From NCBI RefSeq assembly GCF_030144855.1, contig NC_082710.1:151466001-151530000 (forward strand): a stretch of 64,000 bases of DNA, written 5' to 3'. This DNA comes from Hypanus sabinus (Eukaryota). Shown here in pieces: positions 14,991 to 47,154 of this stretch. Position 1 is the first letter of the stretch; the number at the start of each line of letters is the position of its first letter. The position numbers and the translations under genes are program-made. The notes beneath the pieces were generated by a model. It worked only from the letters and a program-made list of their open reading frames with translations. It searched no databases and was not told where the DNA came from.

Positions 14991-16326
14991 GTGTTAATAC
15001 TATTGAATGGATTGACCTAATAACACTAATAAAGTAAAGAGTTTTGAAATGTTTTTCTTTTAGTCTGAATAAGTTATTATGAATAAAGATTATTTGTTGA
15101 AATAAAGAAAGCTCAACATAGACATTTGGCTTCAATCAGCTTCCAGTCTCCCGTGACTCAGTCACAGAACCAGCATCTGTAGTTTTCTTTTAAATATAGT
15201 TTTGCCATCAACTTAAAGATGTTGCTGAAACTATAGGATGTCAAACAGTGCAGCAAACTACAGGCCTTTCAGCCTGTGATGCTGTACTTTAACTTAAAGT
15301 AAGATCAATCTAAACTTTCTCTCTGTCTTGCTTTCATCCATGTTCCTTTGGGTGCACCAAATATTATAGACAAGGTGAGCTTGGTAACTGGAAATGCTCA
15401 GACATTTAGGCTGCTGCAGACAAACATTTGGTGATGTGAGGTGAGAGATGAGTTCTGTGCTTTTGGATAATGCAGTCCTCACTTTGTAATGACGGAATAG
15501 TCAATGGGACAAAATGAGGAAAATATAAATTGTACTTATGTAACATAGAAATACACATCTCCAGACTGGTATTGCAAGGCTGGTTAAAAATAAAATTGCT
15601 AATATACTCTTTGACTAAAGAAAGTTCATGCAAATACAGCACTGCAAAAGCAAAAAAAAATATCATTACTCTGTTAACAATGACAGATATACAGCTCAGA
15701 TATAGTGTGCTTTTGTTTTAATTTGTCCTCCCAAAAACTGCACTCCAATAAATTCTGAACATCAGAAATAATGCTAATTGGAAACACAATAAAACTCTGC
15801 ACAACACACGTAAAACATGCTCACAGTCATTGCAACACCGCACCGTTAGATACTGAGTTTTGCTCCCAGTCTGACCTTCAGACAGCATTCCAAAACTAGG
15901 CCCGGCACACATTACGTTGTTCAATGAAAGCACGCATGGCATGGTCCAGGATTAAAACAAAGATAGCCCTTAAGGCTAGCCCAGAATTTTCTCTGAAGTA
16001 TGGTGAGGAGTTAAAGGCAGTATAAAATTAATTCTCCACTGCACCATCACGTACCTGATGAAGTAATCCAGGTTATGTTGTGGAAAGTTCTGGCAAATGG
16101 ACAAGTGAACTAAGAGCTGGAATCATTTGAGAGCCCCTTTCAGCATCTTCCATCATTCAGTGACATTGTGTCCAGTATGATATTGAGCATTTTTCTGCAT
16201 CATTTCCCAAATCCTTGATTAAACTATGATCCAAAAATCTAAATTTCACAACCTTTGAAACATTCATTGAACTTGACACTGGAGCAAGAAGGTCTCCAAG
16301 TCCCTCCTATTCACAATAGTACTTTG

Positions 16327-16490
16327 TTAATCATGGCTGATTTCAGCAGGTCCTTGCTGGGTACTAAGAGGTTTGCTGTAATTCTTCTTCCTCCAGAAGC
16401 CAATTCCAATGATGATCCCCAGGAGAATAAGTGGAATGATTGCAACTCCAGCCACGATCACTGTCTTTGTATCTTTCTTTGGTGTCCTCT
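16327..16490 (-). CDS. MHC class I-like transmembrane + cytoplasmic exon with stop codon
   Basis: Acceptor atctacag, phase 1. (E)RTPKKDTKT-VIVAGVAIIPLILLGIIIGIGFW-RKKNYSKPLSTQQGPAEISHD*: a 23-aa hydrophobic span followed by a basic stop-transfer. Leader+alpha1-3+TM = 52+252+276+273+164 = 1017 nt = 338 aa + stop. Confidence 0.88.
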
Positions 16491-22892: not shown

Positions 22893-23165
22893 CCTGGGGT
22901 ATATTGAGTCCTTGCAGGAGGGTGGTATGCTCGATGTAACAGGAGTATATTGTCTCTTCATCTTCATTCAATGTAATCATTTTCATCAGCTGATAAGTCC
23001 CATCATGGTTGGGTAATACATCACTGGATTCAATCTCGGGGACCCACTCACCATCTCTCAGCCATGAAACATCGATAGCCTGTGGGTAGAACCCTGTGAC
23101 AAGGCAGGAGAGTCTCAGCAGTTGAAATCCGTCAGTCCTAATACTGATAAACACTTCAGGGATTG
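22893..23165 (-). CDS. MHC class I-like alpha3 (Ig C1-set) domain exon
   Basis: Acceptor acatttgcag, donor G|GTAAGT, 273 nt, phase 1/1. (A)IPEVFISIRTDGFQLLRLSCLVTGFYPQAIDVSWLRDG...VLPNHDGTYQ...YSCYIEH shows the C1-set motifs LxCxxxGFYP, WxxDG, LPNxDGTYQ and YxCxxxH. Confidence 0.95.
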
Positions 23166-26325: not shown

Positions 26326-26601
26326 CTCTCTGCTGTAGCGCTTCTTGACCACACTCAAGATATACCAGCAGCCACTTCACACAGTCCTTCTCCAAGAGAG
26401 CTTTGAAGTATTTGTTCATGATCATGTTGATGTTCCACCGATCTGCAAGCACTTGGAACTCTGGATTTAGCACAATCCAACTCATTCTTTCCTTGTCAAA
26501 AACACATGCATCCTCACCATTGTAGCGCAGTCTTATGAACCCATCTGTGGAGTTATCATTCTTCAATTCACAGCCGCAAATCCCCTGGACAAAGACATCA
26601 G
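26326..26601 (-). CDS. MHC class I-like alpha2 domain exon
   Basis: Acceptor ccccag, donor AG|GTATAC, 276 nt (typical alpha2 size), phase 1/1. (A)DVFVQGICGCELKNDNSTDGFIRLRYNGEDACVFDKERMSW...RWN...DCVKWLLVYLECGQEALQQR retains C101/C164, W147, W167 and Y171 (HLA numbering by eye). A second AG 6 nt upstream could start the exon at 26607. Confidence 0.93.
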
Positions 26602-26689
26602 CTGGGGCTGAGGGAAGGTTGGGGGGGTGGGGGTCGGGGCAAGTGAAAAATAAACAGATGTGGCATCTAGGCACACAAGAAAGTAGAAA

Positions 26690-27790
26690 CATGTGTATCT
26701 CTACCATTTTGTGCATGTCTGCCCTAAACCCATCAACCTGAAACCCCACAAATAATAAGGTTCCTCTTGGACCTCACCTGCCTCCACAGCCAGTGCACAA
26801 TTCTCTCTAACTTCCACCATCTCCAACAGGATCCACATCCAAGCACACCCTTCCCTACACCCATCACTCTCAACTTTCTGCTTTCCACAGGAATCTCTCC
26901 CTACACAACTCACTTTTCCATTCGTCCCTCCCCATCAATTTCCTGCCTGGTACTTATCCTCCCAAGTGGAACAAGTGCTACACCTGTCTCTACACCTCCT
27001 CCCTCACGACCATTCAGGGCCCCAATCAGTTTTTTCCAGGACAGACAACACTTCAGCTGTGAGTCTGCTGTGCCCATCTGCTGTATCCAGTGCTCCCAAT
27101 GGGGCCTTCTGTATATTGTTGAGCAGTAGATTGGAAGACTGCTTTGCCAAGCACTTACACTCCATCCACCAGAAAATCCAGGATCTCCCAGTGGCCTCCC
27201 ATTTTAGTTCCACTTTCAATTTCCATTCTGACATGTCAATCCATGGCCTTCTCTGCTGTTGTGTTGAGGCCATACTCAAGTTGGAGGAGCAAAACCTTGT
27301 ATTCCGTTTGGGCAGCCTCCCATCTGATGGCAGGAACATCGATTTCTCTAACTTCTGATAACGTCCAACCCCCTCACCCCCTTCACCATTCCTCTTCCCT
27401 TTTTCCTCTCTGACCATACCTCCTCACCTGTCTATTGCCTCACACTGGTATACCTTCCCCTTTTCTTCCTTGCATGGCCTTCTACTCTGTCCTATTAGGT
27501 TTCCCTCTTCTCCAGCCCTGTATCTCTTTCACAAATCAATTTCTCAGCTAGTTACTTTACCCCACCCCCTCCCAGATTCACCTACCACCCTCTGTTTCTC
27601 CCTACGCTTCCCCACCTATCAATTCTAATTCCTCATCTTTTTTTTTTCTCTAGTCCTGCTGAATGTTCTCAGCCCAATGCATCAACTGTACACTTTTTCA
27701 TAGATGTGGCATAGCCTACTGAGTTTCACCAGCATTTTCTTTGTGTTGTTTGGATTTCTAAGATCCGTAGATTTTCTCTTGTTTGAGCAT
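26690..27790 (+). mobile_element. Penelope-like element 3' fragment (GIY-YIG + terminal repeat)
   Basis: FSCESAVPICCIQCSQWGLLYI...DLPVASHF...LEEQNLVFRLGSLPSDGRNIDFSNF, pyrimidine-rich UTR, degenerate hammerhead region at about 27650-27690. Confidence 0.85.
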
Positions 27791-29159
27791 GAGTAGGAAC
27801 TACTTGATCCAGCAAACCACAAGTGAACTGCCCCAGATCTCAGTTCTACTTTGTTACATCCACAAATGCTCAACTGCTCAACTCCTCACTATTCCAGCAT
27901 TTTATCCTACCTTTAAAAATGTCGAATGTTCCAGGTGTCACTCTCAGAAGTGCAGAGAGTTCCAGAGAATTCATTATATTTCAAGAATAAATACCATTGT
28001 GCCTCATTATTAAATTACTGGCCTCTAATCTTGTAACATTCTCTCCTCATTCCAAATTCTCTCAAGAGTGGAAACTGTTCAAAATAATTATTCACAGATG
28101 ATCATATATATCATTACATCCTTTGGAGACACAGCTTGTTATTGTAACTGCTCTGCTCACCAATGCAAGAAGTTGCAGATTATCTTACAAAAGTCACTCT
28201 GCCTTCCATGCACAGTCAACATATCAAAGTCAGCTCCCATCTTAGTCATTCCCTCTTCTTCCCGCTTCTTCAGACAGAAGATAGATACTACCAGGCTCAA
28301 GGATAACATCTATCTTGCTCTTAGTAGACTCTTGACTGGACCAATAAAGATAACTCTTGAACTCACCATTTACCTCACAATAGTCCTTCCATCTTATGGA
28401 TTGGCTGCACAGCACTTTTAATGTAACTATAACACTACATTCTAAATTCTGTTATTGTATTTCCCTTTGTTATAATACAATCTACTTATGTTCTGAAATA
28501 ATCTATATGGAAGGCATGCAAAATGAGTGTTTCAATGTACTGAATTTCAGTACATGTGAAAATAATAAACCAATTACACCTTGCCGTTTACCCATGGATT
28601 CTTTTTGTTTTAAACCGTGCACTCATTCTTCTGAATTCCAGTGAGTACACTTCTGGTATTGTTAGCCAGTTATGATTTAAGAAAATAGAACATAGAATAG
28701 TACATCACATTACGGACCCTTCAGTCCACAATTACGTGTCAACTCTTAAACCCTGCGTCCCATATAAGCACCCCCCCACCTTAAATTCCTCCATATACCT
28801 GTCTAGTAGTCTCTTAAACTTCACTAGTGTATCTGCCTCCACCATTGACTCAGGCAGTGCATTCCATGCACAAACCACTCTGAGTGAAAAATATTCCTCT
28901 AGTATCCCCCTTGAACTTCCCTCCCCTTACCTTAAAGCCATGTCCTCTTGTACTGAGCAGTGGTGCCCTGGGGAAGAGGTGCTGGCTATCGATTCTATCT
29001 ATACCTCTGACAGCTTTCTATTCCCAGGGATTAGTAAATGTTTCTCTTCTACATCGTTTCCAATGCCAGCCCATGCAGAAGCAAACACAAATGCACCCTT
29101 AAATATAGTGACACTTTTCAAACAAGATCTTACTATTAGTGGCACAACAGAATAGACTA

Positions 29160-29400
29160 GGAAGGCACATCAGTGTAACTAGTAGAGCTAGAGCCTTACC
29201 TGCTTCTAATCCTGAATGTATGGAGTTTGTTCTCTCTGACCTTATCAGTGCTACGGTTTCCTTCCACTTATGAATGATAATTTGGGTTGGTAGGATAATT
29301 GGCTAATGTAAATTTGCCCAGATGTTTGGGTAAGTAATAAAAAAGGTGGGAGAGCTGATGACAGTATGGCAAGAATAAAAATGGGATTAAAGCAGGGGTA
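29160..29400 (+). mobile_element. tRNA-derived SINE (HE1/V-SINE-like), decayed
   Basis: tgtatggagtttgt...ggtttccttccac...ggtaggataattggctaatgtaaattt pattern. Similar copies at about 30330-30470 (+), 36830-37150 (-), 48615-48810 (-). Confidence 0.6.
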
Positions 29401-29479
29401 TTGTCATCCTGCCAAAGGGTCTCTGCCAAAAATGTCAACTGTACTTCTCTCTGGGAAATCTCACAGCTTTGCATAACCT

Positions 29480-30000
29480 GTCCAACAATTACTGTTGCTA
29501 AAGTGAAGGGGTGTTGACTGTACTCTTTTCCATAGATGATGCCTGGCCTGCTGAGTTCCTCCAGCATTTTGTGTGTGTTACATGGATTTGCAGCATCTGC
29601 AGATTCTCTTTTGTTTGCTATTGCTGTTGATGGTCATCAAGGAACAGTGGGCTGAAGTGGCAGTTCCAATGCTGTATGACCTGATGGCTCCAGGTTTATG
29701 TATGGTAGACATGGACTACCCCCAATCATTGAATGCCATACTTGGACAATACATAATTATTGAGAGAGCAACACTGAAGAAATTCTAGCAACACACAAAA
29801 TGCTGGAGGAACTCAGCAGGCTTGGCAGCATCTATGGAACTAAAAGTACAGTTGACGTCTTCTACAGTTGAAGGCTTTAACCCTTCAGCAGGACCATACT
29901 TTTTTTGATAGATGCTGTCTGGTCTGCTGAGATCCTACAGCATTCTGTGTGTTGCTCAGATTTCCAGTATCTGCAAACTTTCTCTTGTTTCTGAAAATTT
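29480..30000. mobile_element. Cluster of PLE-terminus-derived short repeats in alternating orientation
   Basis: Repeated gatgctgcctggcctgctgagttcctccagcattttgtgtgt and its reverse complement. Confidence 0.7.
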
Positions 30001-30755
30001 GCTATGTCACAGCTACAATGTCTGAGGGGCAGCACTGTTGGAGAGGCAATGTTGAAGGAGGACTACAGAGCAGCAGGATTAAGACTGTGGAAATGAGGCA
30101 ACATACATGGGAAGTACAGATACTTTGGAGAATTGGGATGTCAGAGATCATTGCAGGATCACAGTCAGTACTGACAGTTGGCTACTTTAACAGAATATTA
30201 TAACTGAAGGAATACAATTAGTAATACAAATGTTCAAATGAAATCAGGATCCTTTGTTTGCATTATTAGGACATAAATAAACCAATGGTTTCTCACTCAC
30301 TGCAGTTCAACTAATATATATGATCCAACGTAGTGTAGGATCAGGGTGTGAGTCTGGCCAGTGCCTGTAATGGGTTGGTACACTTTCTCCATGACCACTT
30401 CAGCTTCCTTCCATCTTCCAAAAGGTACCGATTAGGATTAGTCATCTGTGGGCATGTTCTGTTGGCACTGAAAGTGTCTTGACATTTGTAGGCTGCCCCA
30501 GCACAATTCCCACTGATATGATACAAAATAACATATTTCACTATGTGTTCCAGTGCACGTGTGACAAATAATACTGATCATTTAATCTTAATCCATCCAT
30601 TTATTGCAGCTATTGTGACAAATGCTAGACCTTGTAAGATATCATCACCTGCTAACTGGATGTGCAGTGATAAGGACACATTAAACTAAAAAGGTAAGGC
30701 TTTGACTTCATGCAAATTCATCTGCGCAGTCATTGGGTTTTGTCAAGTCACTTAC

Positions 30756-31007
30756 CACTGTGCTGTTGGTGAACAACCTCAACATTCCCTCTGATTATCC
30801 CATGAAAACCTGCCACTGTGATGGCCATTGCATCCCAGTGTTCCCTTGGGAAAGAGTAAGCCATCCACCATTGTCTGGAAACAGCCCTTTGCAGTGTGCT
30901 GTCAAAGTATGCTATCTGCTGGTCATCCAGCATCGCCACCATGCTATATTCAGTCAGCTCACTCGTTCCGTGGTTCAACAAGTAGTAAAATGCAAGGATG
31001 TGAAAAT
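30756..31007 (-). CDS. MHC class I-like alpha1 domain exon
   Basis: Acceptor ttctctgttgcag, donor G|GTAAGT, 252 nt, phase 1/1. (D)FHILAFYYLLNHGTSELTEYSMVAMLDDQQIAYFDSTLQRAVSRQWWMAYSFPREHWDAMAITVAGFHGIIRGNVEVVHQQHS has the class I motifs LDDQQI-YFDS, R..SRQ.W and E.WD. Confidence 0.92.
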
Positions 31008-32199
31008 CTGCAACAGAGAAATAGAAATTAGTGATGCAAAGTGATGTGAAGTTAATTATGTATTACTCTGGATTTCCAGCATCTGCAGAATCTCCCTTGT
31101 TAGTGATGTAAAGACCACAATGCAGAAAGGCATTAACTAATATTAAAACTGATTACATCTTAGGAACATTGGAACCAGGTTATATCAGATGGCTTTTAGG
31201 GGGTGTCCACTTCCAAATGATTTGCATTAACATATTATACATTTTCCTGTTTGCAATGTCTCCATCTTGAAAATTTTGTCAATCTTATTCATTCATGTGT
31301 TCATCGATTAAACATTTCACTGGTTAATGTGTTACAAATTTTACCTCCCCTACCACCTTTTCCAAACCACTAATACCCATTTCAATCCACGCTCCTTCCC
31401 AGTTGCATTCATACATTCATTTATGTCACCATCTCTCTTTCCCCAGCTGCTCCTGGTTTCATTTGTCCTTCACCTCTCATAATGGTTCCAAAATCATCTT
31501 CCTGATGTATCAGATCTCAGCACTTTTATCCATTTTTCTTTATAATTATCAACCTCCGTGGTCCTTAGCCTCACCTCACCTCCCCCTTCCTTGCTTCATC
31601 TTCCTTTTCTTTATTGGCTTCCATCCATCATGTGCAGAACTCCTGTCTTCTGTTGCCATACTCCCCCTCCCCTATGCTGACCCTTTTACCCATTATCGTT
31701 TATCTCCAAACTCCCCATGCCCAGTATACCATAATGTCTTGTTTCACTAATCACTGTGTCGATCTTTCCTTTTCATTTTATGAGCTATCTTCCTCCCTTC
31801 ATCACCGTCCTTTCCCGCAACAGATGCCTCTCAAGCTGCTCAGTTCTTCCAGCAGACAGTTACTCCTGATTCCAGCACCTACTGTCTCTTGTGTCTCAAT
31901 GGAATATTATGATGATATTTGGATGTACATTATTGTGCAAAAGTCTTAAGCAATATACATATATACATGGTTGATTTGTTGGCATCCATCTGTCTTGAAG
32001 GACAATGGGTGATGATGATTATCATCACAAGCATGGGCGGAAGATATGGAGATCCTAAGATGCCCAGTCATCAAGATCACTCACTTAGCCCCACCAGTGT
32101 AGTCCAAAGGAAAGTTAATGAAGCAACAGTTAGCTTGCACACGAGAGTTTGGAGATAATCTATCAGAGTTACAGGGAATTAGCTGGTCCTAAATTGCAG

Positions 32200-35100
32200 A
32201 GGTATGTAGCTGGGTGACTGTAATAAAAATGTGAATAGGCATTTAGCACAGAGCATCATGTGGCCATTCCTTACAATAATAAGTAAACCACTTTGGATAA
32301 TGTTGTTGGGGTGACCTCCCAGGAGACTGCTGGTTTACTGGCACTGAGCGCAAGTCCATTGTGCTGAAAGGAAAAAGGGAGAAGAGGGATGTGTTAGTGA
32401 TAGGGGACTCAACATTCAGGGGATCAGGCAGGAGATTTCATGGAGGTGAACAGTACACTCAAATCGGATGATGCCTCCCTGGTGCCAGGATCATGGACAT
32501 CTCAGATTGCGTCCACAGCACTTTGGAGAGTGAGAAAGAGTAGCTAGATGTTTTAGTACATATTGGTACAAGTGACAGAGGAAGGAAAAACAGAGAGGTC
32601 CTTAAGAGTTAATTTAGAGAGCTAGGTAGAAATCTGAGAAACAGGACCACCAGCATTGCAATTTATGGATTACAGCTTGTGAAGGGTGGTGGGGGGGGGA
32701 ATCTGGATGATCTGGCAGATTATTGAGTGGCTGAGAAGCTGATGTGGAGGGAGGGGTTTCAGGATCTTGGATCTTTAAGATCTCTTCTGGGCGAGATATG
32801 ACCTGTTCAGAAGTGATGGGCTACACTGGAACTGAAGGAGGACCACTGTTCTCACTGGAAGGTTTATTGGAGACAGTTCAAACAAAATTGGTAGGATGTT
32901 TGGGACCAGAGTGAAGGTCTCAGGATAAGATCGATGGTAAAAATGCAAAGATAACATAAAATCAGTCTGTTAGGAAGGGCAGGCAAATGATAGGATGAAA
33001 TTGCAATTAGCAGGGAGAGTATCAGTGCATTAGGGATGAAGATTCAATGTGTAGCAAATATAGTACTCAACGTGTTATATCTCAATGCACGGAGTATAGG
33101 AAATAAGTTGGATGACCTTCTTGCACTATTATAGATTGTTAGGTATGGTGTTGTGGCCATCACGGAATCATGGCTGAAAGATGGTTGGAGTTAGGAGCTG
33201 AATGGTGTAACAGAGGGATAGGATTGAAGGCAGAGTGGGTAGCATGGCTTTGCTGGTAAAGAAAGATGTGAGATAGGATCAGAAGATGTTGAATCCTTGT
33301 GGTTGAGTGAAGATCTTGCAAGGGTAAAAGGACCTGATGGCAGTTAAGTACAGGCATCTAAACAGTAGCTGGGATGTGGAGCACAGATTACAAAGGAAAA
33401 GAGAAAAGGCATATCAAAAGGGCAACGTTATCACAGTCATGGAGATTTCAACATGCAGGTCAATGCAGGAAAATCAGGCTGGTAATGGATCTCAAAACAG
33501 TGAGTCTGCTGAATGCCTATGAGATGGCTTTTTAGAGCAGTTTGTCATTAAGCTGACTAGGGGATCAGCGGATCAGTTATATTGGATTGAGTGTTATGTA
33601 ATGAACTGGATGTGATTAGGGATATTAAGATAAATGAACCCTTAGGAGACAGTGATCATTATTTCAGTGGAGCAAAGGAAATTACATTAGTATGAGAGAG
33701 AATTTGGCCAAAATAATTTGGAAGAAAATGCTGGCAGGGATGTTAGCAGGGCAGTATTGGCATGATTTTTTTGAAAAAAAGTCAACGGTGCAGGATAGAT
33801 TTATTCTAAAAACAAAGAAATAGTTAAATGGCAAAATAATACAACCAGAGCAGACAAGGAATGTCAAAGCTAATTTAAAGTAAAAGATTGGGCATAAAAC
33901 AATGCAAAGATTAGTGCTAAGACATATCGTTGAGAAGCTTTTTAAAACCTACAGAGACCAATAAAAAGAATCATTAGAATGTGAAAGATGAAATATGGAA
34001 GTAAGCTAGCAAGCAATATAAAAGTGGATTGTAAAGATTTTTGAAGTATGTAAAAATGAAAACAAGATGGCAGTGGATATAGGACCACTAGAAAATGAGG
34101 TCAGAGAAATAATAATGGTGGACAAGGAGTGGGCAGAAGAACTAAATGAGTATTTTGCATTAGTCTTCATTGTGGAACACACTAGCAGTGTGCCAGATGT
34201 TGAAGAGTGCAGGGGAAGAGAAGTGAGCACAGTTACTATTACAAGGAAGAAGGTGCTGAAAAAGCTGAAAGACTAAAGGGTAAATAATTCATCCGAGTCA
34301 GATGAACTGCACCCTAGGGTTGTGAATGTGGTAGTGGTAGGGATTGTGGAGGCATTAGTAATGATGTTTGAAAATTCATTGGAATCCAACATGGTGCCAG
34401 AGGACTGAAAAATTGCAAATGTCACTCCACCCTTTAAGGAAGGAGGAAGGCAGCAATGAGGAAATTACAGACCAGTTAGACTGATCTCAGAAGTTGGGAA
34501 GATATCAGAGACAATTGTTAAGGATGAGGTTATAGAGTATTTTGTGAGAAAGGTCAAGATAGGACAAAGTCAACATGGTTTAATTAAGAGAAAATCTTGC
34601 CTGATAATCCTTTGGGAATTCTTTGAGGAGATTACAAGTAGGATAGATAAAGGGGATGTAGTGGATGTTGTATATTTGGACTTCCATAAGGCCTTTGACA
34701 AGGTGCCACACATGAAGCTGCTTACCAAGTTAACTGCCCATGGTATTAAAGGTAAGTTACTAGCATGGCTGTTTGGTAGGAGGCTGCGAATGGGAAGAAA
34801 AGGATCCTGTTGGATGCCAGTGAATAGTGGTGTTATGATGGCTTCTTTTTATGCTGTATGTCAATGACTTGGATGATGGAACAGATGGCTTTGTTGCCAA
34901 CTTTGCAAATAATATGAAGATTGGTGGAGGGACAGGTAGTGTTGTGGAAAGAGATAGGCTGCAGAAGGACTTAGACAGATTAGGAGAATGGGCAAACAAA
35001 GTGGCAAATTAAATACAATTTTGGAAAATGCATGGCCATGCACTTTGATAGAAGAAATAAACGTGCAGGCTATTTTCTAAATGGGGAGATATCAAAAATT

Positions 35101-35820
35101 CTGAGATACAAAAGGACTTGGGAAACCTTGTGCAGAATGCCTTAAAGGTTAACTTGCAGGTAGAGTTGGAAGTGAGGAAGGCAAATGTAATGTTAGCATT
35201 CATTTCAAAAGGTCAAGAATACAAGAGCAGGGAAGTGATGCTGAGGCTATATACGGCCGGGGCTGAGGCCTCACTTCGAGTGTTGTGAATAGCTCTGGAC
35301 TCCTGATCTAAGAAAATGTGCTGGCATCGGTGATGGTTCAGAAGTAGCTCACAACTTTGATTCTGGGAATGAAAGTGTTATCATACAAGGAACGTTTGAT
35401 AGCAGTGGGTCTGTACACCCTGGAATTGGAGGGATGGGGAGGGGAAATCTCATTGTGAAACCTTATGAATGTTTTGAAGTCCTAGACCGAGGAGATGAGG
35501 AAAAGATGTTTCCCATGATTGGCAGTCTAGGACAGAGTACATGGCCTCAGGATAGTGGGGTGTCCATTTAAACCAGAGGGTGGTAACTTTCTGGAATTTA
35601 TTACCACAGGCAGTTGTGGAGGCCAGGTCACTGGATGTATTTAAGGCAGAGCTTGCTAGGTTTTTGATTGCACACAACATCAAAGGTTACGTGGGGGGAA
35701 GGCCAGCAGTTGGGCTGAGGAGGGAAATCAAAGGATTAGCCATGATTAAACCGTGGAGCAGACTCGATCGGCGAAATGGCCTAATTCTGCTCCTATGTCT
35801 TACAGTCTTATGGTTTTATT
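32200..35820 (+). mobile_element. CR1-clade LINE (HER1-like), long degraded copy: ORF1 esterase, APE endonuclease, RT, 3' tail
   Basis: ORF1 GDS...CLPGARI...VHIGT; endonuclease YLNARSI...VAITESWL; RT VYLDFHKAFDKVPH, FANNMKIGG; 3' tail ggcctaattctgctcctatgtctt. Confidence 0.93.
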
Positions 35821-36746
35821 ATAGTCAATATGTTTGGCACTAGCTTGGCTGCAAGGAACTACCAGAAGGATCTTCAATGATGTCCATCCACCTTAAGGGC
35901 TCCACTCTGGATTTGTTGTCTGTGATTACACCCATAGCCTTCGTCTCTCCCAAAGCTGCCTGCAAGGCAGTAGGTCTCCTTACCCTTAGGGAAGATTTAT
36001 TTCACGAGCAGCAGTGTGTGTCCAGACAACAGTGGGACTGCGTGCTATGTGTACAGGAGCCAGACCTCCTCCCTGTCCACTGTAGTTCAGCCTGAGTCTA
36101 AAAGAAGTTCAGTTTCCATGTGTCGCCAGCAAGGTGGTACTACATGAGGTTTGCTGTTGGACAGGCTATGTACTGGCAGGGAGAGACTTATACATTCCAT
36201 TCTCCTTTTTGTAAGACTGCTAGCCAGTGTGGAAGCTGAAAGTGAGAGTGACACGCACTGCCCACTACAGTACCACACTAGATGCATCAAAACAACTGTA
36301 GGTAGAGAGATAGGGTGCTTAAGATTTTTGTACAGTATTGTATTTGTCAACATGGAGCAGAAAATAGGTCTGCAAATATGGTGGGAAGAAAAGATGTTGC
36401 GAATGGCAATGCTGGAGCACTGTGGGATGTGTGTGACAGGGAGCATAGACAAAATGTCAAGCTGGTGGTGGGGTGGTGCAGTTGCAGACTTATCCAGCTT
36501 TGAGTCGCCAGGCAAGTACATTGTATTCCAAACAGCTGGTATATTGATCACTACAGAATGTCTCTCTGGTGCTTCCTGCTCCCTCCCCGATCCCTTCAGA
36601 ATGACCCAGCCCTGATTCCTCTCTCCCTGCCCCCTTCCCATTTTCAGTCCACAAGCGAGACCTATATCAGAATCAGGTTTATCATTACTCACAGAAGTCA
36701 TAATTTTTTCTGTGGTCACAGAAGTCTGCAGTACATAAACTTACTA

Positions 36747-36813
36747 CACTACTGTGCAAAAGTCAAGCACCCTAGCTATATATAAGTGCACAAGGCTTTT
36801 TTTCCCAGTACTG
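36747..36813. mobile_element. Tiny Tc1/mariner-type MITE (near-palindrome)
   Basis: ta|cactactgtgcaaaagtc...gcttttt...cagtactg|tg: degenerate TIRs and TA context. Half copy at about 31925-31950. Confidence 0.5.
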
Positions 36814-37233
36814 TGATATGAAAGATGTTATAGAATCATAGAGAGGTATAACATGCATACAGGCCATTCTGTACACCAAATCTCTGCCAACCATCAAACA
36901 CCAATTTAGATTAATTTTACTCTAAATGATTTCAGTCACTCCATTCTGCCATTAACTCCCACTGGGGCAAAATCACAGCAGTCAATTCACATAGTATGCT
37001 GCACTCCTTTTGAATGTGCGAGGAGACACGGACACGCAAAGGAAACCCATGTGATCACAAGGGCAACATGGAAACTGCAAGCAGAGACCTTTGGAATTTT
37101 GGATTGAAACTGGAAAATTGGAGCAATGAGCCATAATTTTATGGACTGTACCACTGTGCTATTTATGATACAGAAGAGGTTTCCTTAGGTTTCCACAGCT
37201 GGTAAAAGTCTTATGTTGGGATTCTTTAAATTG

Positions 37234-40200
37234 TATCAACAATAGAGGGTATTGGAAGCCAAAGAAAATCAACAACTCCCCTATGATCAGGTCAGTTAGT
37301 AATTGCAGAGTGTAAACTTAACAGTTATACTGGCTGAAAGAGAGTGGGAGATCAGGAGCATTTACTTCAATGAGAGGACATCTGGATACAAGTCCAGGAT
37401 AGCTTCTCTACTCCAGCAATCCACATTGAAAATTCTCAACTGTAATTCTCCAAACAAGGCTGAGTGGGGAGCAGCAACTTTCTAAGTGATTTTATAAAGC
37501 AATCCCCAGCTAAGGAGATGTTCTTTTTCCCACAGGGAACTGTTAATTCAAAACTAGATACATCATTACCTTTAATTTTATTCCACAAAAATTTGAGAAC
37601 AAACTTCTAATTACAGGTTAATAATTACCAAACAATAAGACCATAAGTTCATATGACATAGGAGGAAAATTAGGCCATTCAACTTATTGAGTCTGCTCTG
37701 CCATTCCATCATGGCTGATCCCAGATCTCACTCAACACCGAACACCTGCCTTCTTGCCATATCCTTTGATGCCATGACCGATCAAGAAATATTCAACTTC
37801 TTCCTTAAATATACCATGGAGTTGGCCTCCACTGCAGTCTGTGCAAAGCATTCCACAGATTCCCTACCCTATGGCTAAAAAAATCCTCCTTACTTCTGTC
37901 TTTAATGGTCACCTCTCAGTTTTGAGGCAGTGATCTCTAGTTCCGGACACCCCTACCAGATCAGATTCAGATTCAGCATCAGTTTATTGTCATTTAGAAA
38001 CCACAAATGCAATGCAGTTAAAAATGAGACAATGCTCCTCCAGAATGATATCACAAAAGCACATGACAATACAGATTACACTAGAAAATCCACATAATGT
38101 TTGGCAATCCCCAATTCAGAGTCCAGAGAGGCGGCTCTCCACATCTATCCTATCTAGACCTTTCAACATTCGTAGGTTCCAGTAAGATCCCCCTGCATTG
38201 TTCTAAGTTCCAAAGTGTACAGAGAAAAGCTGCCAAACACACTTATTATAATCCGTTCATACCCGGAATCATCCATATTAATCTCCTCTGGACTCTCACA
38301 AATGATAACATAACCTTTTTGAGACATGGGGTATAAAACTGTTGGCAAAGATTATTGAAATAAGGAGAACTTAGGGGAAATTCCAAATTAGAGAAAACCA
38401 GCTATAAATTAGAATCAACATGAAGGGGCAATGTTCAGAAGCACTTAGTCACACAAGCAGTTAATGGAAATCTGTAAGTTTCTCTGCAGAAAAATACCTG
38501 TAGAAGCTGGGTGCCAATTAAAAATTTTAAGATTGAAATTGATAGCTTTCACTTATTTATGTATGTAATGGTCTAGTGACAAAATGGCAGATAGAGCTGA
38601 TCAGTTTAATGATAGAAGAAACTCAGATTTTAATTGTGCATCGCTTGTTCCTTGGAGGTAAGTTTGCAACTCACAGCATTTGACATGACACACTCTCAGT
38701 TTACTCTACAGGAGGAGCTCTCAGTTCCCCATCAATAGGGGAAGCGTAAAGAAAATGTTTAAGATGTAAGACAATTAGAGAAAAGGAGTTTTGTTGATGT
38801 TTGGAGAGAGAGAAATAATACAGTGGTCATGCTGCAACAGAGAACATAGAGGGGTAGAAAAATAGTATTCTTAATCCATGCATGTTGAGGAGATGAATAT
38901 TGGGAGATCAAATTCAAGTGGAAAGCGTACAGTAAATGAGAGAGTTATTCTGGTGCACATCCCTAGCTCTCCAAAAGCGGCAATACAAGTAGACAGAATG
39001 AAGTAGTAAGTCTAGAGACTGCAACAGATAGTATCCAGCTGCTGTGCTGAGAATGATGAAATAAATCTGTCTTTTCTGGCAATCAAGGGTGGTATAATAG
39101 GACAGGAAGAGTATATCAACTAGAATAAGATGTCAACAGTTTTAAAAACTGTGCATATTGCACAGTTAATACAGGCTGATTTTCATGATTGGTTCCATTG
39201 TTAAATGTCAGCCAATAAGAACCTTGGGATATGGATATACATTAATGAAGACGCTGCTTTATTATGGAAAGTACGCATTCTACTCTTAAGATTCAAGGTA
39301 CGTTTATAATTAGAGAATATACTAATTATACTGCCTGGAGATTTGTTTGCTTACATGGAACCTCAAAGCAGGAAATCTGCAAGAACCCAAATGAAAAAAA
39401 AAACAAGCCCCATTGCACAAATGAAATAACAAAACTCATGCAAACAATTGAACCAATCAACAATAGTCCTTAGTTCAGTACCTCAGAGTATCCAAGTGGA
39501 TGCCCAGAGCCTCTCTTACTAGTTCATCATATTAGTAGGCACGGAGCAGAGCAGCTGGTGCATTCTCTATCTCCTCAGCACCATGAACAAAGGAGTGACC
39601 ATAGCAATGAGCAGGTGAAATTGCCCCTTGCCTCAGATCCTGACACTCTGTCTTTTCAGTTTTTCTAGGCCAATATCCAAATTGACCAAATAATGGAACA
39701 ACAAAAGGCTCCGGCGTCCTGGAGAGTGGAGTGAACATCACGAGAATGAAGGAAATTAGCTTGCACCTCCACTCAGCAACCAGAGCATTCCAAAATACCA
39801 CCCGGGCCACCTGTATGAGCATCAGAATTCCACTGACCCAATGTCTCCTGTCCGAATGGCTAGCTCACTGAATCTACATTGATTCTGCAAAGTACCTTCT
39901 CAACTCATCCTCCTATTGTCATCACTTGCCTCCTCACTGTTTGCAGCAATAATTTAACATAACTTACCTCAGAGAATGTATCCTTTGATGTTTTTAGTCA
40001 ATTTTATGGTCTTTTGAATTACCAGTGAGCTGTCACACATGTTCAACAGAGCCACCTAAACTGGAAGTGGTATTCTGCTATTACTTGTGTTGCAACTTAC
40101 ACTGTATTTTGTTCTGTTCCTCAACATAATAAAAAAATCTGTAATAGAACTTCTCACAAGGCTTTACTACAGAACAGGGATCACCGTTTCTCTCAATCAT

Positions 40201-41500
40201 TCATCCACATTAAGACAATGACCCAGTAAAAACCTAGGGACTGCTCAACAATATATTAAATTTGCAAATGCTAACAATATTTTTGGTTCTTTCATAGTTC
40301 ATAAACAGAAAGTTAAATTACTTACTGGAAGAGACTGTAAAGTAAAAAGCAGCATGCTTTAAATGTAGTCAGGGCATTAATTAACCAAGTGACTAACAGC
40401 AGTGACAGTAACTTGATCTCTTGTAGATTTTAACAGACTCTGGTGTGGAGCTACTTATTGGTCCATGTGTATTGCAAACCTGACAACCACATCCACTGAG
40501 AATGAAAGAGATTGGTCTGGTCACTAATTATCAGTCAATGGAGTCTGATGATCTGATTTTACACTCGCATATACACAACAACATTCATGTCAACTACTCT
40601 GCCCAGAGCACTTTAAAGACAAAGAAGTGCTTTACAATGTTGAATTACTTAGTCATGCACAATGCTGTCAGTTCTACAAACAGAGTTTTGGGATTAACAG
40701 GAATATCTTCTTTAGAGTACTGCTTGAGAAATATTTATGAATCAGTGTGTTGCTAAGAATTTCCTTGTTATTCTCTGATGTAGTGTCATGGCATTTTTCT
40801 ATAAGATGAGAGACAGATGTGAGCTCAGGCTATAATTTTTTCAAGATGTAAAAGTGTAGATATCAGCCAACACTGCCTGACACTCAGTACGTACATAGAT
40901 TTCTCAATGATCCTCGTTCTGATTACTGGGCAGATTCAGATTCTGATAGGCTTATTATCATACAAGACCATAAAACAAGGAGCAGAATTAGGCCATTCAG
41001 CCCATCACGTCTGCTCCACTATTTCATCATGATTGGACCATTTCCCTTTAAACAACCTTCTCTTCCTTCTTCCCATAACCTTTCACACCCTGACAAATAA
41101 AGAACCTATAAACCTCTGGTTTAAGTGCACCCAATGGCCTGCTCTCCACAGCCACCTATTGCAATGAATTGCACTGATTCGCCACCATTTAGCTATAGAA
41201 ATTCCCTGTCAATTTATTTTTAAATGGAAGTTCCTCAATTCTGAGCCCATAGCCTCTAGTTCTGCTATAGGCCACATCCTCTCCACGTTGACTATCCAAG
41301 CCTTTCAACATGCAATAGGTTTCAATGAGATCCTCCTTCATTTTTCTAAATTCCAGTGAGTACAGGCCCAACACCATCAATCTTCTCTCAAACAATAACA
41401 CTTTCAATCCCAGGATAATTCTTGTGAACCTCCTCTGAACCCTCTCCAATGTTAGTGCATCCTTTCTTAGATAAGGGGCATAAAACTGCTCAGAGTACTC
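37234..41500. repeat. Segmental duplication, proximal copy (MHC promoter/leader/5' intron 1)
   Basis: Collinear direct similarity to 59081-64000 through unique sequence and shared CR1 fragments, roughly 85-90% identity by eye. Homology starts at tatcaacaat in both copies. Confidence 0.93.
40326..40355 (-). pseudogene. Defective proximal copy of the leader exon (22-nt deletion, phase 0)
   Basis: ATG CTG CTT TTT ACT TTA CAG TCT CTT CCA|GTAAGT. Matches the distal leader except for loss of 22 nt (ggctaaacagtggatgttcagt on + strand) and G>A at donor -1. Spliced to alpha1 it reads IFTSLHFTTC* (out of frame). The nearest upstream ATG is followed by CCC TGA. Confidence 0.8.
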
Positions 41501-43130
41501 TAGGAAGCCTCACCAGTGCCTGATAAAGCCTCAGCATTACTTCCTTGCTTTTATATACCAGTCCTCTTGAAGTGAATGTAAATATTGCATTCGCCTTTCT
41601 CAATACTGACTCATACTATCAGTCATCCTGTAGGGAATCCTGACCAAGTACCTCCTAAGTTCCTTTGGGCCTCAGATTTCTGAATTTTCGCCTCATTTAT
41701 AAAACAGTCTTTGCTTTTATTCCTTCTCTCAAAGTGCACTTCCATACATTTCCCAAAACTATACTCCACCTACTGTTTCTTTGCCCATTCTCCTAATCTG
41801 CCTATGTCCTCTGCAGCCCACCTGCCTCCACAATACTCTATGCCTCTCCACCTTAGAACCATCAAACTCATCATCTACCTCATTGAAATATACTATATAA
41901 AGGAAGCAATCCCAACATGGACCCATGCAGAACACCACTAATCACCACCAACAAACAAAAGGCTCCCATTATTGCCAGTCTTTCTCTCCTGCCATTCAGC
42001 CAATGCTTGATCCATGCAAGTGCCTTTCCTTTAATACCTTATCTTGTTAACCAGCATCATGTGCAGAATTTTGTCAAATGCCTTCTGAAAATTCAAGTAT
42101 GCACCAGCCACCAATTCTCCTTTGTCTGTCCTGTTTGTTATTTCTTGAAGGAATTCCAACAGATTATTCAGGCAGCAGTGTCTCTAAAGGAAAGTTGCTA
42201 ACATCAGCCTTTTTTATCGTGTGTCTCTAAGTACCCTGACATCTCATCCTTAACAATTGGTACCAACAATTTTCGATCCACTGAGTTCAGGCTAACTGAC
42301 TTATAATTTCCTTTCGGCTCCCTCCCTCCCTATTAAGAGTGAGGTGATATTTGCAAATTTCCAATCCACTGGAGACATGTCAGAATCCAGTGATTCTTGA
42401 AAGTTTATTACTAATGCCTCCACCATCTCTTCAGCTACCACTTTCACACTGCTGGGGTCCATCCCGTCCAGCTGCCTTACCAACTTTATTCCCTTTCAGA
42501 TTCCCAGGTACCTTATTCCTAGTTATAGCAACTGCACTCACTTCTGCCACTACACTCTCGAGCTTCCATCATAACGCTAGTATCTTTCAAAGTGATAATT
42601 GAAACAACATATGTACTTATTTAGTTAATCCACCATTTCCTTAATGCTTCTCTAACATCATTCTCCAGTGGATCAATATCCACTTGCCCCTGTTTTACTC
42701 CTTACAATTCTGAACAAAAATTTTCATCTGAACTTTGATATTATAGGATAGCTTCATATTTCCCTTTCTCCCTCCTTCTGGCTTTTTAGTTGCCTTCTGT
42801 TGGTTTTTAAAAGTGTCCCAATCTTCTAACATCCTACTAACTTTTTTTTTCTCAATGACATGCCCTCTCTTTTGCTTTTGCATTGTCTTTGACATGGTGG
42901 CATTATCCTGCATTTTGAATGCTTCTTCTTCATTGGGATGTATCTAACCTGTGCATTCTGAATTGCTCCCAGAATCTCCACCAATGCTGTCCTGCCATCA
43001 TCCCTGCCAGTGTCTCCTTCCAATGAACTTTGTCCAACCCCTTTATCATGCCTTGATTATTACCTTTACTCCACTGTAATAATGATACATCTGGCTTTAG
43101 CTTCTCCCTCTCAAACTGAAAGATGAATTA
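40960..43130 (-). mobile_element. CR1-clade LINE RT/3' fragment
   Basis: MERVQRRFTRII...LGLYSLEFRKMKEDLIETY and SGPDGM/WKFANIT motifs on the minus strand. Confidence 0.9.
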
Positions 43131-43819
43131 TGTCATATGATAGACCATTCAGCCCACAATGCTGTGCCGACCTGCTAAAAAGCAAATCAAAAACAACCAA
43201 ACACTTATCCCTCCTACCTACACAATGTCAATTCCCGTCCATCTTTCTTACATCCATGTACCTAGACAAATGTCTTTTAAAAACATTCACTGTATATTAA
43301 TCACTTCCTTCTATAGTTTCCTGTCTTCAGCTCCCTAATCAAATCTGGCTTATTGCACAATACCAAGTCAGGAACAGCCATTTCCCCTTATGGGCTCAAA
43401 CATCAGCTGCTCTAAAATGCCACCTCATGGGTAGATTCTAATCTAAGAGAAAGCTAATTTTCCCAATCTTCTTGCATATCAAAATCCACCATGATCTTTG
43501 TAGCATTGTCTTTTTGACACATCTTTTCTTTCTCCCATTGTAATTTGTAGCCCACATCCTGGCTACTGTTTGGGGGCTTGTATATAATTCCCATCAGCAT
43601 CTTTTAATTCATTCTGCTTTCTACACAATATCTTTTAGGATTCTAAATCTTCCAATCTCCTGTTACCTCTTTTTAGGAATTTGATTTTATTATTTACCTC
43701 TAGAACCACCACTGCCCCTGCCTGTTCCTACACACAATGTGTATTCTTGGATATTCAGCTCACTGACCCCAATAGAGGCAGGACTTGCTTAACAGTTCCA
43801 TAGGAACCAGGAAACAGTC

Positions 43820-44150
43820 ACATGTCTTGGAGCAGGTTCCGGACATCAGGCCTGGAACCAGGAATCAGATATGGGGTCAGGGAACGCGGACCAGAGATCA
43901 GATGCAGGGCCTGGAAACAGGGACAAGATACCAAATGTGAAACCAGTGATGAGACAGTGGGCCTGGAAATATGGATCAAATGCCAATCTTTAAGCCGGCA
44001 TTCAGACCACCAGCATGGGATCCAGGTGGACTCCACAAATTGGCCTGGAGACAGCAAACAGATAGCTGGCTCCAGAACCAGCATCCAGAGTTCATGTCTG
44101 GAGACATGGTGCAGAAACTGGACTTGGGACCAGCAATCAGACACCACACC
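43820..44150 (+). repeat. Degenerate tandem repeat (ggcctgga(a/g)ac...cagat units, about 50-80 bp)
   Basis: ggcctggaacc (about 43850), gggcctggaaac (43908), gggcctggaaat (43960), ggcctggagac (44042), ctggagac (44098). Confidence 0.45.
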
Positions 44151-44229
44151 TGTCCCAACTATTATATTTAATGCTCTGTTCAATTTGAGGAATAATGCAA
44201 ATGTATTTTATTTACATGAATGGACAGGA

Positions 44230-46600: not shown

Positions 46601-47154
46601 TGGGTTTAAATAGTTGAGATACATCTACTTTAGAAAACCAATTTTACCTTTCAGCATAAAAATAAATCAACATAATTTACAAGAAATTTAATTCATGTAA
46701 ATTAGTTGAAGGGCAAATATCAAATGAAGCACTTCATTGTCCACTTCAATCACAATTAGAAATCCAAATGAATGGGCCCTCATTAGATGGACCAGTTGCA
46801 TTATCAGTTGCCGAGTGTATACTTCCCCTGACCATGACCTGTACAGGAAACGCCCTGCTGAGCTTGAAGGCTAAACAGGAAGACCACATTGTAGCAGTGA
46901 TCTCCAGGTGATTTATGCCTCCTACTGGCATGCATGCTGTCAACAGTCATCCAGTGTTTCTCTGTACAAACTCTGATTGCCATCAATGCGACACACCCTC
47001 GATGACGGAATAATGAACCCTACAGCTAATTATTGCATTTCCCTTGAGTTATCAATTCTCCATAAAAATGCTGCCATGTGATCTTCCTACTGTTTGAGAT
47101 ACAACACAGGAACAGTCCCTTTGTCTAGGCAAATCCATAGCAAACTCATTAACA

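What the first reader, a model, noticed from the sequence alone, without database searches (positions are those of the whole stretch)
26326..31007. Non-classical class I with a de-anchored, hydrophobic groove (possible lipid or other non-peptide ligand)
Seen, with HLA numbering aligned by eye: Y7>F, Y59>H, no R/Y84 (alpha1 ends ...VEVVHQQHS), T143>L, K146>R, Y159>L; only W147 and Y171 are kept. Both helices are rich in small and aliphatic residues (WDAMAITVAGFHGIIRGNVEVV; FQVLADRWNINMIMNKYFKALL). Established: these residues fix peptide termini in classical class I including shark UAA, and cartilaginous fish have non-classical lineages (UBA, UCA, UDA, UEA). Inference: this is a non-classical molecule, possibly CD1/MR1-like in function; I cannot assign the lineage and it could be new.
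Basis: partly seen in the sequence, partly recalled or inferred. Interest (0 to 1): 0.7.

Follow-up and report, generated by a model that had tools for sequence, protein, structure and literature searches.

The report
Stingray nonclassical MHC gene beside UGA
This is an intact, already annotated Atlantic stingray gene for an MHC class I-like protein whose greasy binding groove lacks the peptide anchors and has barely changed across sharks and rays. It belongs to a sister branch, unnamed as far as I could find, of the shark 'UGA' family (reported to bind lipids), so it probably holds a fixed non-peptide ligand.

Summary
The finding covers the alpha1 and alpha2 exons of a five-exon minus-strand gene. 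The exons are leader 62864-62813, alpha1 31007-30756, alpha2 26607-26326, alpha3 23165-22893 and TM/tail 16490-16327. They encode 340 aa. Residues 40-340 are identical to NCBI XP_059825167.1 ('MR1-like', Hypanus sabinus).

Aligned to a classical shark class I, the changes are Y7F, Y59H, Q at position 84, Y123A, T143L, K146R and Y159L. W147 and Y171 are kept.

The gene is not new. Its lineage has one clearly orthologous gene in 13 shark and ray species (57-92% identity). The next best relatives are about 40% identical.

In trees the lineage is monophyletic (100/100) and sister to the lineage of PDB 9CH4, titled 'shark nonclassical MHC class I, UGA'. Together with UFA (8GM8) they form a clade apart from classical class I. 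In sawfish it lies directly upstream of three UGA-like genes.

Its 45 groove positions are the most hydrophobic of any group compared (0.68 hydrophobic, 0.05 charged) and are nearly invariant. They include an unpaired Cys at floor position 99.

It lacks the MR1 Schiff-base lysine, the CD1-type tail motif and the peptide anchors. Binding of a lipid-like ligand is inferred, not shown. I found no published name for the lineage. The scan had noted UGA and UFA genes elsewhere in this genome.

The parts
62813..62864 (-). Leader (signal peptide) exon: ATG at 62864, 17 codons (MLLFTLLNIHCLATVSS) plus 1 nt, donor G|GTAAGC. It is missing from the NCBI gene model.
   Evidence: Found by a scan for ATG plus hydrophobic core plus phase-1 donor. 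It is unique in the window (E 4e-8). It is 82% identical to the matching exon in the sawfish locus L001 12581-12631 and matches the annotated leaders of the Heptranchias and Pristiophorus orthologs. Joining it gives D as the first mature residue, as in orthologs.
31008..62812 (-). Intron 1, 31,805 bp, full of repeats and retroelement debris.
   Evidence: No other class I exon lies in the window (tblastn).
30756..31007 (-). Alpha1 exon (252 nt, phase 1 at both ends), with acceptor ...ttgcag| and donor G|GTAAGT.
   Evidence: Pfam MHC_I E 0.004. The best PDB match is 9ch4_A (UGA), E 4e-18.
26326..26607 (-). Alpha2 exon (282 nt), with acceptor ...ccctcag| and donor G|GTATAC. It carries the C101-C164 pair, an extra Cys at floor position 99, and a conserved N-S-T sequon.
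   Evidence: Pfam MHC_I E 2e-15. The best PDB match for this exon alone is MR1, E 2.5e-16. A 168-nt contig of a possible RNA run begins to match exactly at 26326.
22893..23165 (-). Alpha3 exon (273 nt), an Ig C1-set domain.
   Evidence: Pfam C1-set E 4e-17.
16327..16490 (-). Exon for the connecting peptide, transmembrane segment and short cytoplasmic tail (RKKNYSKPLSTQQGPAEISHD), ending in TAA at 16329-16327.
   Evidence: The spliced product is identical to P0057 (XP_059825167.1) from residue 40 to the end.
16264..16326 (-). Remnant of the ancestral tail. Twenty codons are still open behind the TAA, followed by the ancestral TGA. In the red stingray Hemitrygon the TAA position is CAA (Gln) and the tail runs on for 21 more residues.
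   Evidence: comparison with P0166.

Best explanation
Shown. This is the intact Atlantic stingray (Hypanus sabinus) copy of an old non-classical MHC class I lineage, here called X. It has clear orthologs in 13 shark and ray species and seems absent outside elasmobranchs. X is the sister and chromosomal neighbour of the UGA lineage. It groups with UFA and UGA, apart from classical class I.

The protein has the full class I layout: signal peptide, alpha1-alpha2 platform with the 101-164 disulfide, C1-set alpha3, and transmembrane anchor. It has lost the residues that clamp peptide ends. The groove is lined almost entirely with aliphatic, aromatic and small residues, and these are nearly invariant across sharks and rays.

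Inferred. The heavy chain pairs with beta-2-microglobulin. It holds one conserved hydrophobic non-peptide ligand in its groove, most likely a lipid or lipid-like molecule as reported for UFA and UGA. A few conserved polar residues (H59, T66, N77, Q84, R146, Y155, D163) would position a head group. It displays this ligand at the cell surface to a conserved receptor, plausibly an innate-like T-cell receptor.

The tail has no conserved YxxO sorting motif. Loading would therefore more likely occur in the secretory pathway than in endosomes.
For: Gene structure and intactness: five exons with canonical splice sites and a 1023-nt ORF. Residues 40-340 equal XP_059825167.1.

Orthology: 13 elasmobranch proteins at 57-92% identity. 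The next best relatives are 39-42% (UGA-like) and 33% (classical). A profile search drops from E 1e-122 to 1e-46 after the orthologs.

Trees: X is 100/100 with a ray/shark split like the species tree. X+UGA has 94/72 and 84/69 support. X+UGA+UFA-like has 92/81 and 85/68.

Lineage names: the titles of PDB 9CH4 (UGA; Z 29.3, rmsd 1.9 A, 268 aligned) and 8GM8 (UFA; Z 23.4).

Synteny: in sawfish the order is X, then three UGA-like genes in the same orientation.

Groove: 7 of 9 anchor residues are replaced. It is the most hydrophobic of all groups compared. Twenty-five of 45 groove positions are invariant in 13 species. Groove positions (0.89) and the rest of alpha1-alpha2 (0.81) are more conserved than alpha3 (0.77). 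The central alpha1 helix motif AGFHGxxxG and the alpha2 helix motif MNxYFKxLLExDC are shared with UGA.

Lipid binding by UFA and UGA is reported in PMC12562908 and a CD1-like UFA in PMC10751288.

No decay: the stingray has 6 private changes at otherwise invariant sites, against 0-5 in the other species.
Against: No ligand, beta-2-microglobulin pairing, surface expression or receptor was tested. I could not read model coordinates, so whether the groove is open, and its volume, are unknown.

The lipid-binding claim for UFA and UGA is a personal communication in a review, and X is only about 40% identical to UGA.

The groove keeps several invariant polar residues and a free cysteine. These would also suit a small polar or reactive metabolite.

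RNA evidence here is weak. There was no clear RNA run, only one 168-nt contig ending at an exon boundary.

Support for X+UGA is moderate, not decisive. The groove-position mapping rests on sequence alignment and is unreliable for CD1.
Confidence: 0.6

Rival explanations
1. The protein has a class I fold but presents no antigen. The groove is closed or filled by its own side chains, and the protein does another job, as HFE, FcRn, MIC and ZAG do.
For: After UGA, the structural neighbours of the model are about equally chicken CD1-1, ZAG, HFE, classical class I and FcRn (Z 25-26.5). An invariant, bulky, hydrophobic groove lining (F70, F113, W147, M152, Y155, F156, W167) could equally be a conserved packed core.
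Against: Neither groove helix contains a proline (direct reading of the sequence). From memory, such a proline kinks the helix that closes FcRn's groove. Small residues at G69, G76, G97, A123, A26 and A62 are invariant or nearly so and would open space. The nearest relative, UGA, is reported to carry lipid. The protein keeps a membrane anchor and the C1-set domain.
Confidence: 0.17
2. It presents a small metabolite, like MR1. The groove would hold a small reactive molecule, perhaps captured covalently by the invariant free cysteine at floor position 99, in the way MR1 uses Lys43.
For: MR1 is the best non-shark match of the lineage profile (190 bits) and the best match of the alpha2 exon alone. 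Alpha1-alpha2 is more conserved than alpha3, which I recall as also true of MR1. Cys99 is invariant in all 13 species and specific to X; UGA has F and classical class I has Y. Invariant polar residues line the groove. There is no endosomal sorting motif.
Against: The MR1 lysine 43 equivalent is Ala or Thr. The aromatic cradle residues Y62 and W69 are Met or Ile and Phe. MR1's lead over classical class I is only a few bits. The profile search returned nothing outside elasmobranchs above 175 bits, and no mammalian MR1 was among the candidates scored, so the tree could not include MR1. A cysteine may simply be a small hydrophobic residue.
Confidence: 0.1
3. It is a specialised presenter of peptides or lipopeptides. 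It would bind a restricted set of hydrophobic or acylated peptides without the usual terminal clamps, as chicken YF1*7.1 and Mamu-B*098 do.
For: YF1*7.1 and Mamu-B*098 structures with acylated ligands are among the close structural matches (Z 26.5-27.3). W147 and Y171 are kept and K146 is conservatively Arg.
Against: Both ends of the groove have lost their hydrogen-bonding tyrosines and T143. The groove is far more hydrophobic than any classical-type group compared. Z scores do not separate these from dozens of ordinary class I structures.
Confidence: 0.1
4. It is a decaying or silent gene copy.
For: The cytoplasmic tail ends 21 residues early because of a TAA where the red stingray has CAA. 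No clear RNA run was found. The NCBI model lacks the leader.
Against: All five exons are open with canonical splice sites. The number of private substitutions is in the range of the other species. The distal tail is poorly conserved across the lineage anyway. The leader exon is present and conserved.
Confidence: 0.03

Closest known systems
UGA, shark non-classical MHC class I (PDB 9CH4, released 2026-03-18)
   Same: It is the nearest solved structure and nearest lineage: profile 272.6 bits, and Z 29.3 with rmsd 1.9 A over 268 residues. It is the sister clade in both trees. It is a tandem neighbour in sawfish, and an earlier scan note places a UGA gene about 65 kb from this window. It shares L159, hydrophobic 143, A123, G69, G76, G97, Y155, F156, D163 and the helix motifs AGFHGxxxG and MNxYFKxLLExDC.
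   Different: Identity is only 38-42%. Both lineages coexist in the same shark and ray species, so they are old paralogues. UGA keeps Y7, Y59, K146 and the N86 glycosylation site, which X has lost. X has Cys99 where UGA has Phe. The X groove is more hydrophobic (0.68 vs 0.53). A skate UGA tail carries YQNI, which X lacks.
UFA, shark non-classical MHC class I described as CD1-like (PDB 8GM8)
   Same: It falls in the same clade of cartilaginous-fish non-classical lineages (92/81 and 85/68). It is MHC-linked. It has a hydrophobic groove reported to bind lipids.
   Different: Identity is 29-32%, with Z 23.4. UFA-like proteins are shorter in alpha2 and lack W133 and K146. Earlier scan notes say the stingray UFA genes lie 1.3-1.5 Mb away and end in GPI-type tails, whereas X has a transmembrane segment plus tail.
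Mammalian MR1
   Same: The public annotation calls this gene 'MR1-like'. MR1 is the best non-elasmobranch sequence match, especially in alpha2. Like MR1 (as I recall), X is a single-copy gene with alpha1-alpha2 highly conserved relative to alpha3.
   Different: There is no Lys43; it is Ala in the stingray and Thr in a shark ortholog. Y7, Y62 and W69 are F, M or I, and F. MR1's margin over classical class I is only a few bits. I could not include MR1 in a tree.
CD1
   Same: It has a class I fold. Groove hydrophobicity is at the level of a CD1b-like protein by my index (0.68 vs 0.60; mean hydropathy 1.30 vs 1.19). Chicken CD1-1 is the second representative structure (Z 26.5).
   Different: Identity is 29%, and E is only 1e-22. 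CD1 is not among the best 60 profile matches in the PDB. There is no conserved YxxO tail motif. X keeps the 101-164 disulfide and classical-type domain lengths.
Classical class I (UAA) and peptide-binding UDA
   Same: The exon and domain layout are the same. W147, Y171, C101-C164 and the C1-set alpha3 are kept.
   Different: Identity is 33%. Seven of nine terminus-binding residues are replaced. X lies outside the classical-type clade. As I recall, UDA was described as keeping 8 of 9 such residues (Almeida et al. 2020; the paper is not held in the library).

Membership tests
MHC class I superfamily | Alpha1-alpha2 platform (Pfam MHC_I), Ig C1-set alpha3 and a membrane anchor, with one exon per domain joined in phase 1 | tested here: met
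   Pfam hits. The exon phases and splice sites fit. The AF2 model of the ortholog has pLDDT 90.7 and matches class I structures at Z 26-29.
MHC class I superfamily | Association with beta-2-microglobulin | not tested
   No beta-2-microglobulin sequence was in hand, so no complex prediction was run.
Classical class I (UAA) | Conserved residues that bind peptide termini: Y7, Y59, R/Y84, Y/F123, T143, K146, W147, Y159, Y171 | tested here: not met
   Only W147 and Y171 are kept; K146 is Arg.
Classical class I (UAA) | High allelic polymorphism in the groove | not testable with these tools
   The DNA runs that matched came from related stingray species, not from conspecifics. Across species the groove is nearly invariant.
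UGA lineage | Falls within the clade that holds the 9CH4 protein | tested here: not met
   X and the 9CH4-like group are each 100/100 and are reciprocal sisters at 38-42% identity. Both are present in the same species.
UFA lineage | Falls within the clade that holds the 8GM8 protein | tested here: not met
   Identity to 8GM8-like proteins is 29-32%, and they form a separate 100/100 branch.
MR1 | Lys43 for the Schiff base, and the aromatic cradle (Y7, Y62, W69, W156) | tested here: not met
   The HMMER alignment of an ortholog to MR1 gives K43 as T (A in the stingray), Y62 as I or M, and W69 as F.
MR1 | Orthology by phylogeny | tested here: inconclusive
   MR1 is the best non-shark match by only 4-14 bits over classical class I. 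No MR1 sequence could be brought into the tree.
CD1 | Deep hydrophobic pockets that bind lipid tails | tested here: inconclusive
   The groove lining is as hydrophobic as in a CD1b-like protein by a sequence index. Pocket depth and ligand were not measurable.
CD1 | YxxO endosomal sorting motif in the tail (most isoforms) | tested here: not met
   No tyrosine motif is conserved in the tails of the 13 orthologs.
UDA lineage | Keeps 8 of 9 terminus-binding residues (as I recall from Almeida et al. 2020) | tested here: not met
   Two of nine are kept. The defining paper could not be read.

The most novel reading that the evidence does not exclude
Lineage X is a third, so far unnamed, antigen-presenting system of sharks and rays alongside UFA and UGA. 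It would capture a conserved small or lipid-like ligand covalently through its invariant free cysteine at groove-floor position 99, as a thiol counterpart of the MR1 Lys43 mechanism, and show it to an invariant T-cell population.
Probability: 0.07. Interest if true: 0.85.

Novelty: new member of a known kind. Interest (0 to 1): 0.5.

Why it matters
If sharks and rays have kept three separate MHC-linked class I lineages with greasy, invariant grooves (UFA, UGA and this one) since before they split, then non-peptide antigen display had already diversified early in jawed vertebrates. It would not be a late invention of tetrapods.

This lineage is a clean test case. It appears as one clearly orthologous gene in 13 shark and ray species, has an almost frozen groove, and has a solved close relative for modelling. 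Its public label 'MR1-like' is misleading, and most public gene models of it lack the true signal-peptide exon. Both points matter for anyone who wants to express the protein.

Tried and rejected
- **Alpha2 acceptor.** My first choice (26601) was replaced by 26607. The NCBI model uses 26607, and the manta ortholog supports it.
- **Leader exon.** I first looked within 6 kb upstream of alpha1 and found none. A strict scan also gave nothing. A relaxed scan plus homology placed the leader 31.8 kb upstream.
- **Literature.** There were no hits for the PDB codes. No primary paper on shark UFA or UGA is in the library. The UDA and UEA papers are not held. Nothing usable turned up on the dogfish UCA lineage, so I could not exclude by reading that X equals UCA. 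No dogfish protein appeared among the X orthologues in three searches.
- **Lineage names in databases.** None of the cluster members carries a curated lineage name.
- **Expression.** Two run searches found no run on record as RNA. The reads laid were contigs of DNA runs from related stingrays, plus one possible RNA contig. Expression is therefore not shown here.
- **Promoter.** The sigma-70 scan does not apply to a vertebrate gene. There is no ISRE-like GAAANNGAAA near the leader exon.
- **MR1 in the tree.** The profile search did not return mammalian MR1, so the MR1 question rests on PDB bit scores only.
- **Structure of the stingray protein itself.** No stored reference holds the full spliced ectodomain. 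The NCBI model lacks 22 mature residues, and the red stingray model skips 15. I therefore folded the sawfish ortholog (77% identical). Coordinates are not readable, so no cavity volume was computed.


Full report
**What is there.** These are the alpha1 and alpha2 exons of one gene. Downstream on the same strand lie an Ig C1-set exon at 22893-23165 and an exon at 16327-16490. The last exon codes the connecting peptide, a transmembrane segment, a short tail and a TAA stop. All junctions are phase 1 with canonical AG and GT.

Pfam calls MHC_I for alpha2 (E 2e-15), weakly for alpha1 (E 0.004), and C1-set for alpha3 (E 4e-17). A tblastn of the four exons against the window finds no second class I gene.

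**The leader exon.** The signal-peptide exon is not near alpha1. It lies 31.8 kb upstream at 62864-62813 and reads MLLFTLLNIHCLATVSS, followed by G|GTAAGC. It is unique in the window. It is 82% identical to the matching exon in the sawfish locus and matches the annotated leaders of two shark orthologs.

The five exons give a 1023-nt open frame of 340 aa. [quoted passage not shown] So the genome is the Atlantic stingray and the gene is already annotated. The public model starts at an internal Met and misses the leader and 22 mature residues.

**The observation.** I aligned the protein with a classical-type shark class I that keeps the anchor residues (P0072). The changes are:
- Y7>F
- Y59>H
- T143>L
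- K146>R
- Y159>L
- Y123>A

W147 and Y171 are kept, and the N86 glycosylation site is lost.

Position 84 is Q by the aligners' gap placement and H if one counts back from C101. Neither is R or Y. The secondary-structure boundaries of an AF2 model of the sawfish ortholog (pLDDT 90.7) agree with the numbering.

| Group | Hydrophobic fraction | Charged fraction | Mean hydropathy |
|---|---|---|---|
| This lineage (X) | 0.68 | 0.05 | +1.30 |
| Classical-type shark class I | 0.50 | 0.18 | +0.15 |
| UGA-like | 0.53 | 0.11 | +0.69 |
| A CD1b-like protein | 0.60 | 0.09 | +1.19 |

These figures cover 45 groove positions.

**Which lineage.** A full-library search with the alpha1 exon and two word-index searches found a tight group of proteins in 12 other shark and ray species. 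All are auto-named 'MR1-like' and are 57-92% identical to the stingray ectodomain. The species are skate, sawfish, manta, red stingray, sawshark, sevengill shark, two catsharks, zebra shark, epaulette shark, bamboo shark, smooth-hound and basking shark. Most species show a single gene. The sevengill shark assembly lists several near-identical models on separate contigs. The next relatives are 39-42% identical.

A profile of the group drops from E 1e-122 to 1e-46 after its own members and returned nothing above that gap outside elasmobranchs.

In maximum-likelihood trees the group, here called X, has 100/100 support, and its internal branching splits rays from sharks. Its sister is a second group that is also present in both sharks and rays (100/100). 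Support for the pairing is 94/72 with CD1 in the tree and 84/69 without it.

Structure search of the model gives that sister group its name. The top match is PDB 9CH4, 'Crystal structure of shark nonclassical MHC CLASS I, UGA' (Z 29.3, rmsd 1.9 A, 268 aligned, 38% identity). PDB 8GM8 is 'shark nonclassical MHC CLASS I, UFA' (Z 23.4). Proteins resembling 8GM8 in alpha1, taken here as UFA-like, join X+UGA at 92/81 and 85/68. Three elephant-shark genes join that clade at 92/88. Classical-type shark class I, teleost U and a multicopy shark group lie elsewhere in the tree.

X is therefore neither UGA nor UFA. By the anchor count it is not UDA either; I recall UDA as keeping 8 of 9 anchors, but the paper was not readable. 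I found no published name for X and could not exclude that it has one.

**Genomic setting.** In sawfish the X gene (LOC127585976, 13.956-13.978 Mb) is followed in the same orientation by three 'F10 alpha chain-like' class I genes; the two I placed (P0168, P0174) are UGA-like. The block lies between TRIM39-like genes and COL11A2/RXRB. All four are marked 'MHC-Ib' in the supplement of Verissimo et al. 2023. In the little skate, an X protein and a UGA-like protein are listed on contigs of the same length, perhaps one contig. I did not check that. The picture is an old tandem duplication that predates the split of sharks and rays.

**How it probably works.** The groove lining is nearly frozen. Twenty-five of 45 positions are invariant in 13 species: F7, Y9, Y22, F36, H59, T66, G69, G76, N77, Q84, V95, G97, C99, F113, Y118, A123, W133, L143, R146, Y155, F156, L159, L160, D163 and Y171. 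Groove positions (0.89) and the rest of alpha1-alpha2 (0.81) are more conserved than alpha3 (0.77). That is what one expects of a molecule that binds one ligand, not many.

X shares 22 of 45 groove positions with UGA and 11 of 45 with classical class I. It also shares two helix motifs with UGA. A 2025 review reports, as a personal communication, that crystal structures and mass spectrometry show UFA and UGA binding lipids like those of CD1d (PMC12562908). Verissimo et al. call UFA CD1-like.

My best reading is therefore a beta-2-microglobulin-associated surface molecule that holds a conserved lipid-like ligand. This is inference; nothing here measured a ligand. The tail has no conserved tyrosine sorting motif, whereas a skate UGA tail has YQNI.

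**The MR1 label.** MR1 is the best non-shark match, but only by 4-14 bits over classical class I. The Schiff-base Lys43 is Ala in the stingray and Thr in a shark ortholog. The aromatic cradle is replaced by aliphatic residues. The name is an annotation artefact of a marginal best hit.

One feature does recall MR1 in spirit. An unpaired cysteine at floor position 99 is invariant in X and absent from UGA (Phe) and classical class I (Tyr). Whether it touches a ligand is unknown.

**State of the stingray copy.** It carries six private changes at otherwise invariant sites (P19T, P44S, I78V, Y80H, F89V, G112R). The other species carry 0-5. Its tail ends 21 residues earlier than in the red stingray because a CAA has become TAA, and the old frame behind the stop is still open. 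The distal tail varies widely between species, so I do not read this as decay.

Expression was not shown here. The matching runs were DNA of related stingrays. One 168-nt contig of a possible RNA run starts to match exactly at the alpha2 exon boundary.

**Verdict.** The gene is known to annotation, and its sawfish ortholog is flagged as MHC-Ib in the literature. What I could add:
- the full gene structure with the distant leader exon;
- its placement as the sister and neighbour of UGA within the UFA/UGA clade;
- the extreme conservation and hydrophobicity of its groove;
- the invariant Cys99;
- the rejection of the MR1 label.

Noticed in passing
window 16264-16329 (minus strand): The stingray tail stops at a TAA where the red stingray Hemitrygon has CAA. 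Twenty further codons and the ancestral TGA are still readable behind it, so the loss of the last 21 tail residues looks recent. I could not check the stop in reads, because the reads call was already used.
   Followed up: partly
window 29480-29971 and 30956-31100 (introns 2 and 1): Contig depth in stingray DNA runs reaches hundreds of thousands to millions here, against about 10 in the flanks. Many contigs join 29575-29579 to 31066-31073. These are copies of a very high-copy short interspersed repeat. One of them sits about 50 bp upstream of the alpha1 acceptor.
   Followed up: no
window 7631-8011 (-) and 9894-10250 (+): These are fragments of reverse-transcriptase ORFs (Pfam RVT_1, E 4e-5 and 2e-7). 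They are retroelement debris downstream of the gene.
   Followed up: partly
proteins P0054, P0055, P0057, P0060, P0062, P0138, P0166 (public gene models of the orthologs): Most NCBI models of this lineage miss the true leader exon. They start at an internal Met or at an invented N-terminus. The red stingray model also skips 15 residues at the alpha1/alpha2 junction, and the skate and zebra shark models read through introns. Only the sevengill shark and sawshark models carry the real signal peptide.
   Followed up: partly
protein P0156 (thorny skate UGA-like), cytoplasmic tail: The tail reads ...RKKRRDYQNIP.... This is a YxxO motif very like the one I recall from human CD1b (RRRSYQNIP). Lineage X has nothing comparable.
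   Followed up: no
proteins P0085, P0094, P0100 (elephant shark, auto-named MR1-like and ZAG-like): These three chimaera genes join the X+UGA+UFA clade at 92/88 when CD1 is left out. This hints that the clade predates the split of chimaeras and elasmobranchs. Their branch is long, and with CD1 in the tree they move to the root.
   Followed up: partly
window 62964-63010 (minus strand), 100-140 bp upstream of the ATG: Two CCAAT-type boxes (CCCATTGG and GGCCAATAAG) lie upstream of the leader exon, where a class I Y box would be expected. No ISRE-like element is nearby. This was not tested further.
   Followed up: no
window 36090-36740 (minus strand, inside intron 1): This is a stop-free stretch of 217 codons with no obvious identity. 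It was not examined and is probably repeat-derived.
   Followed up: no
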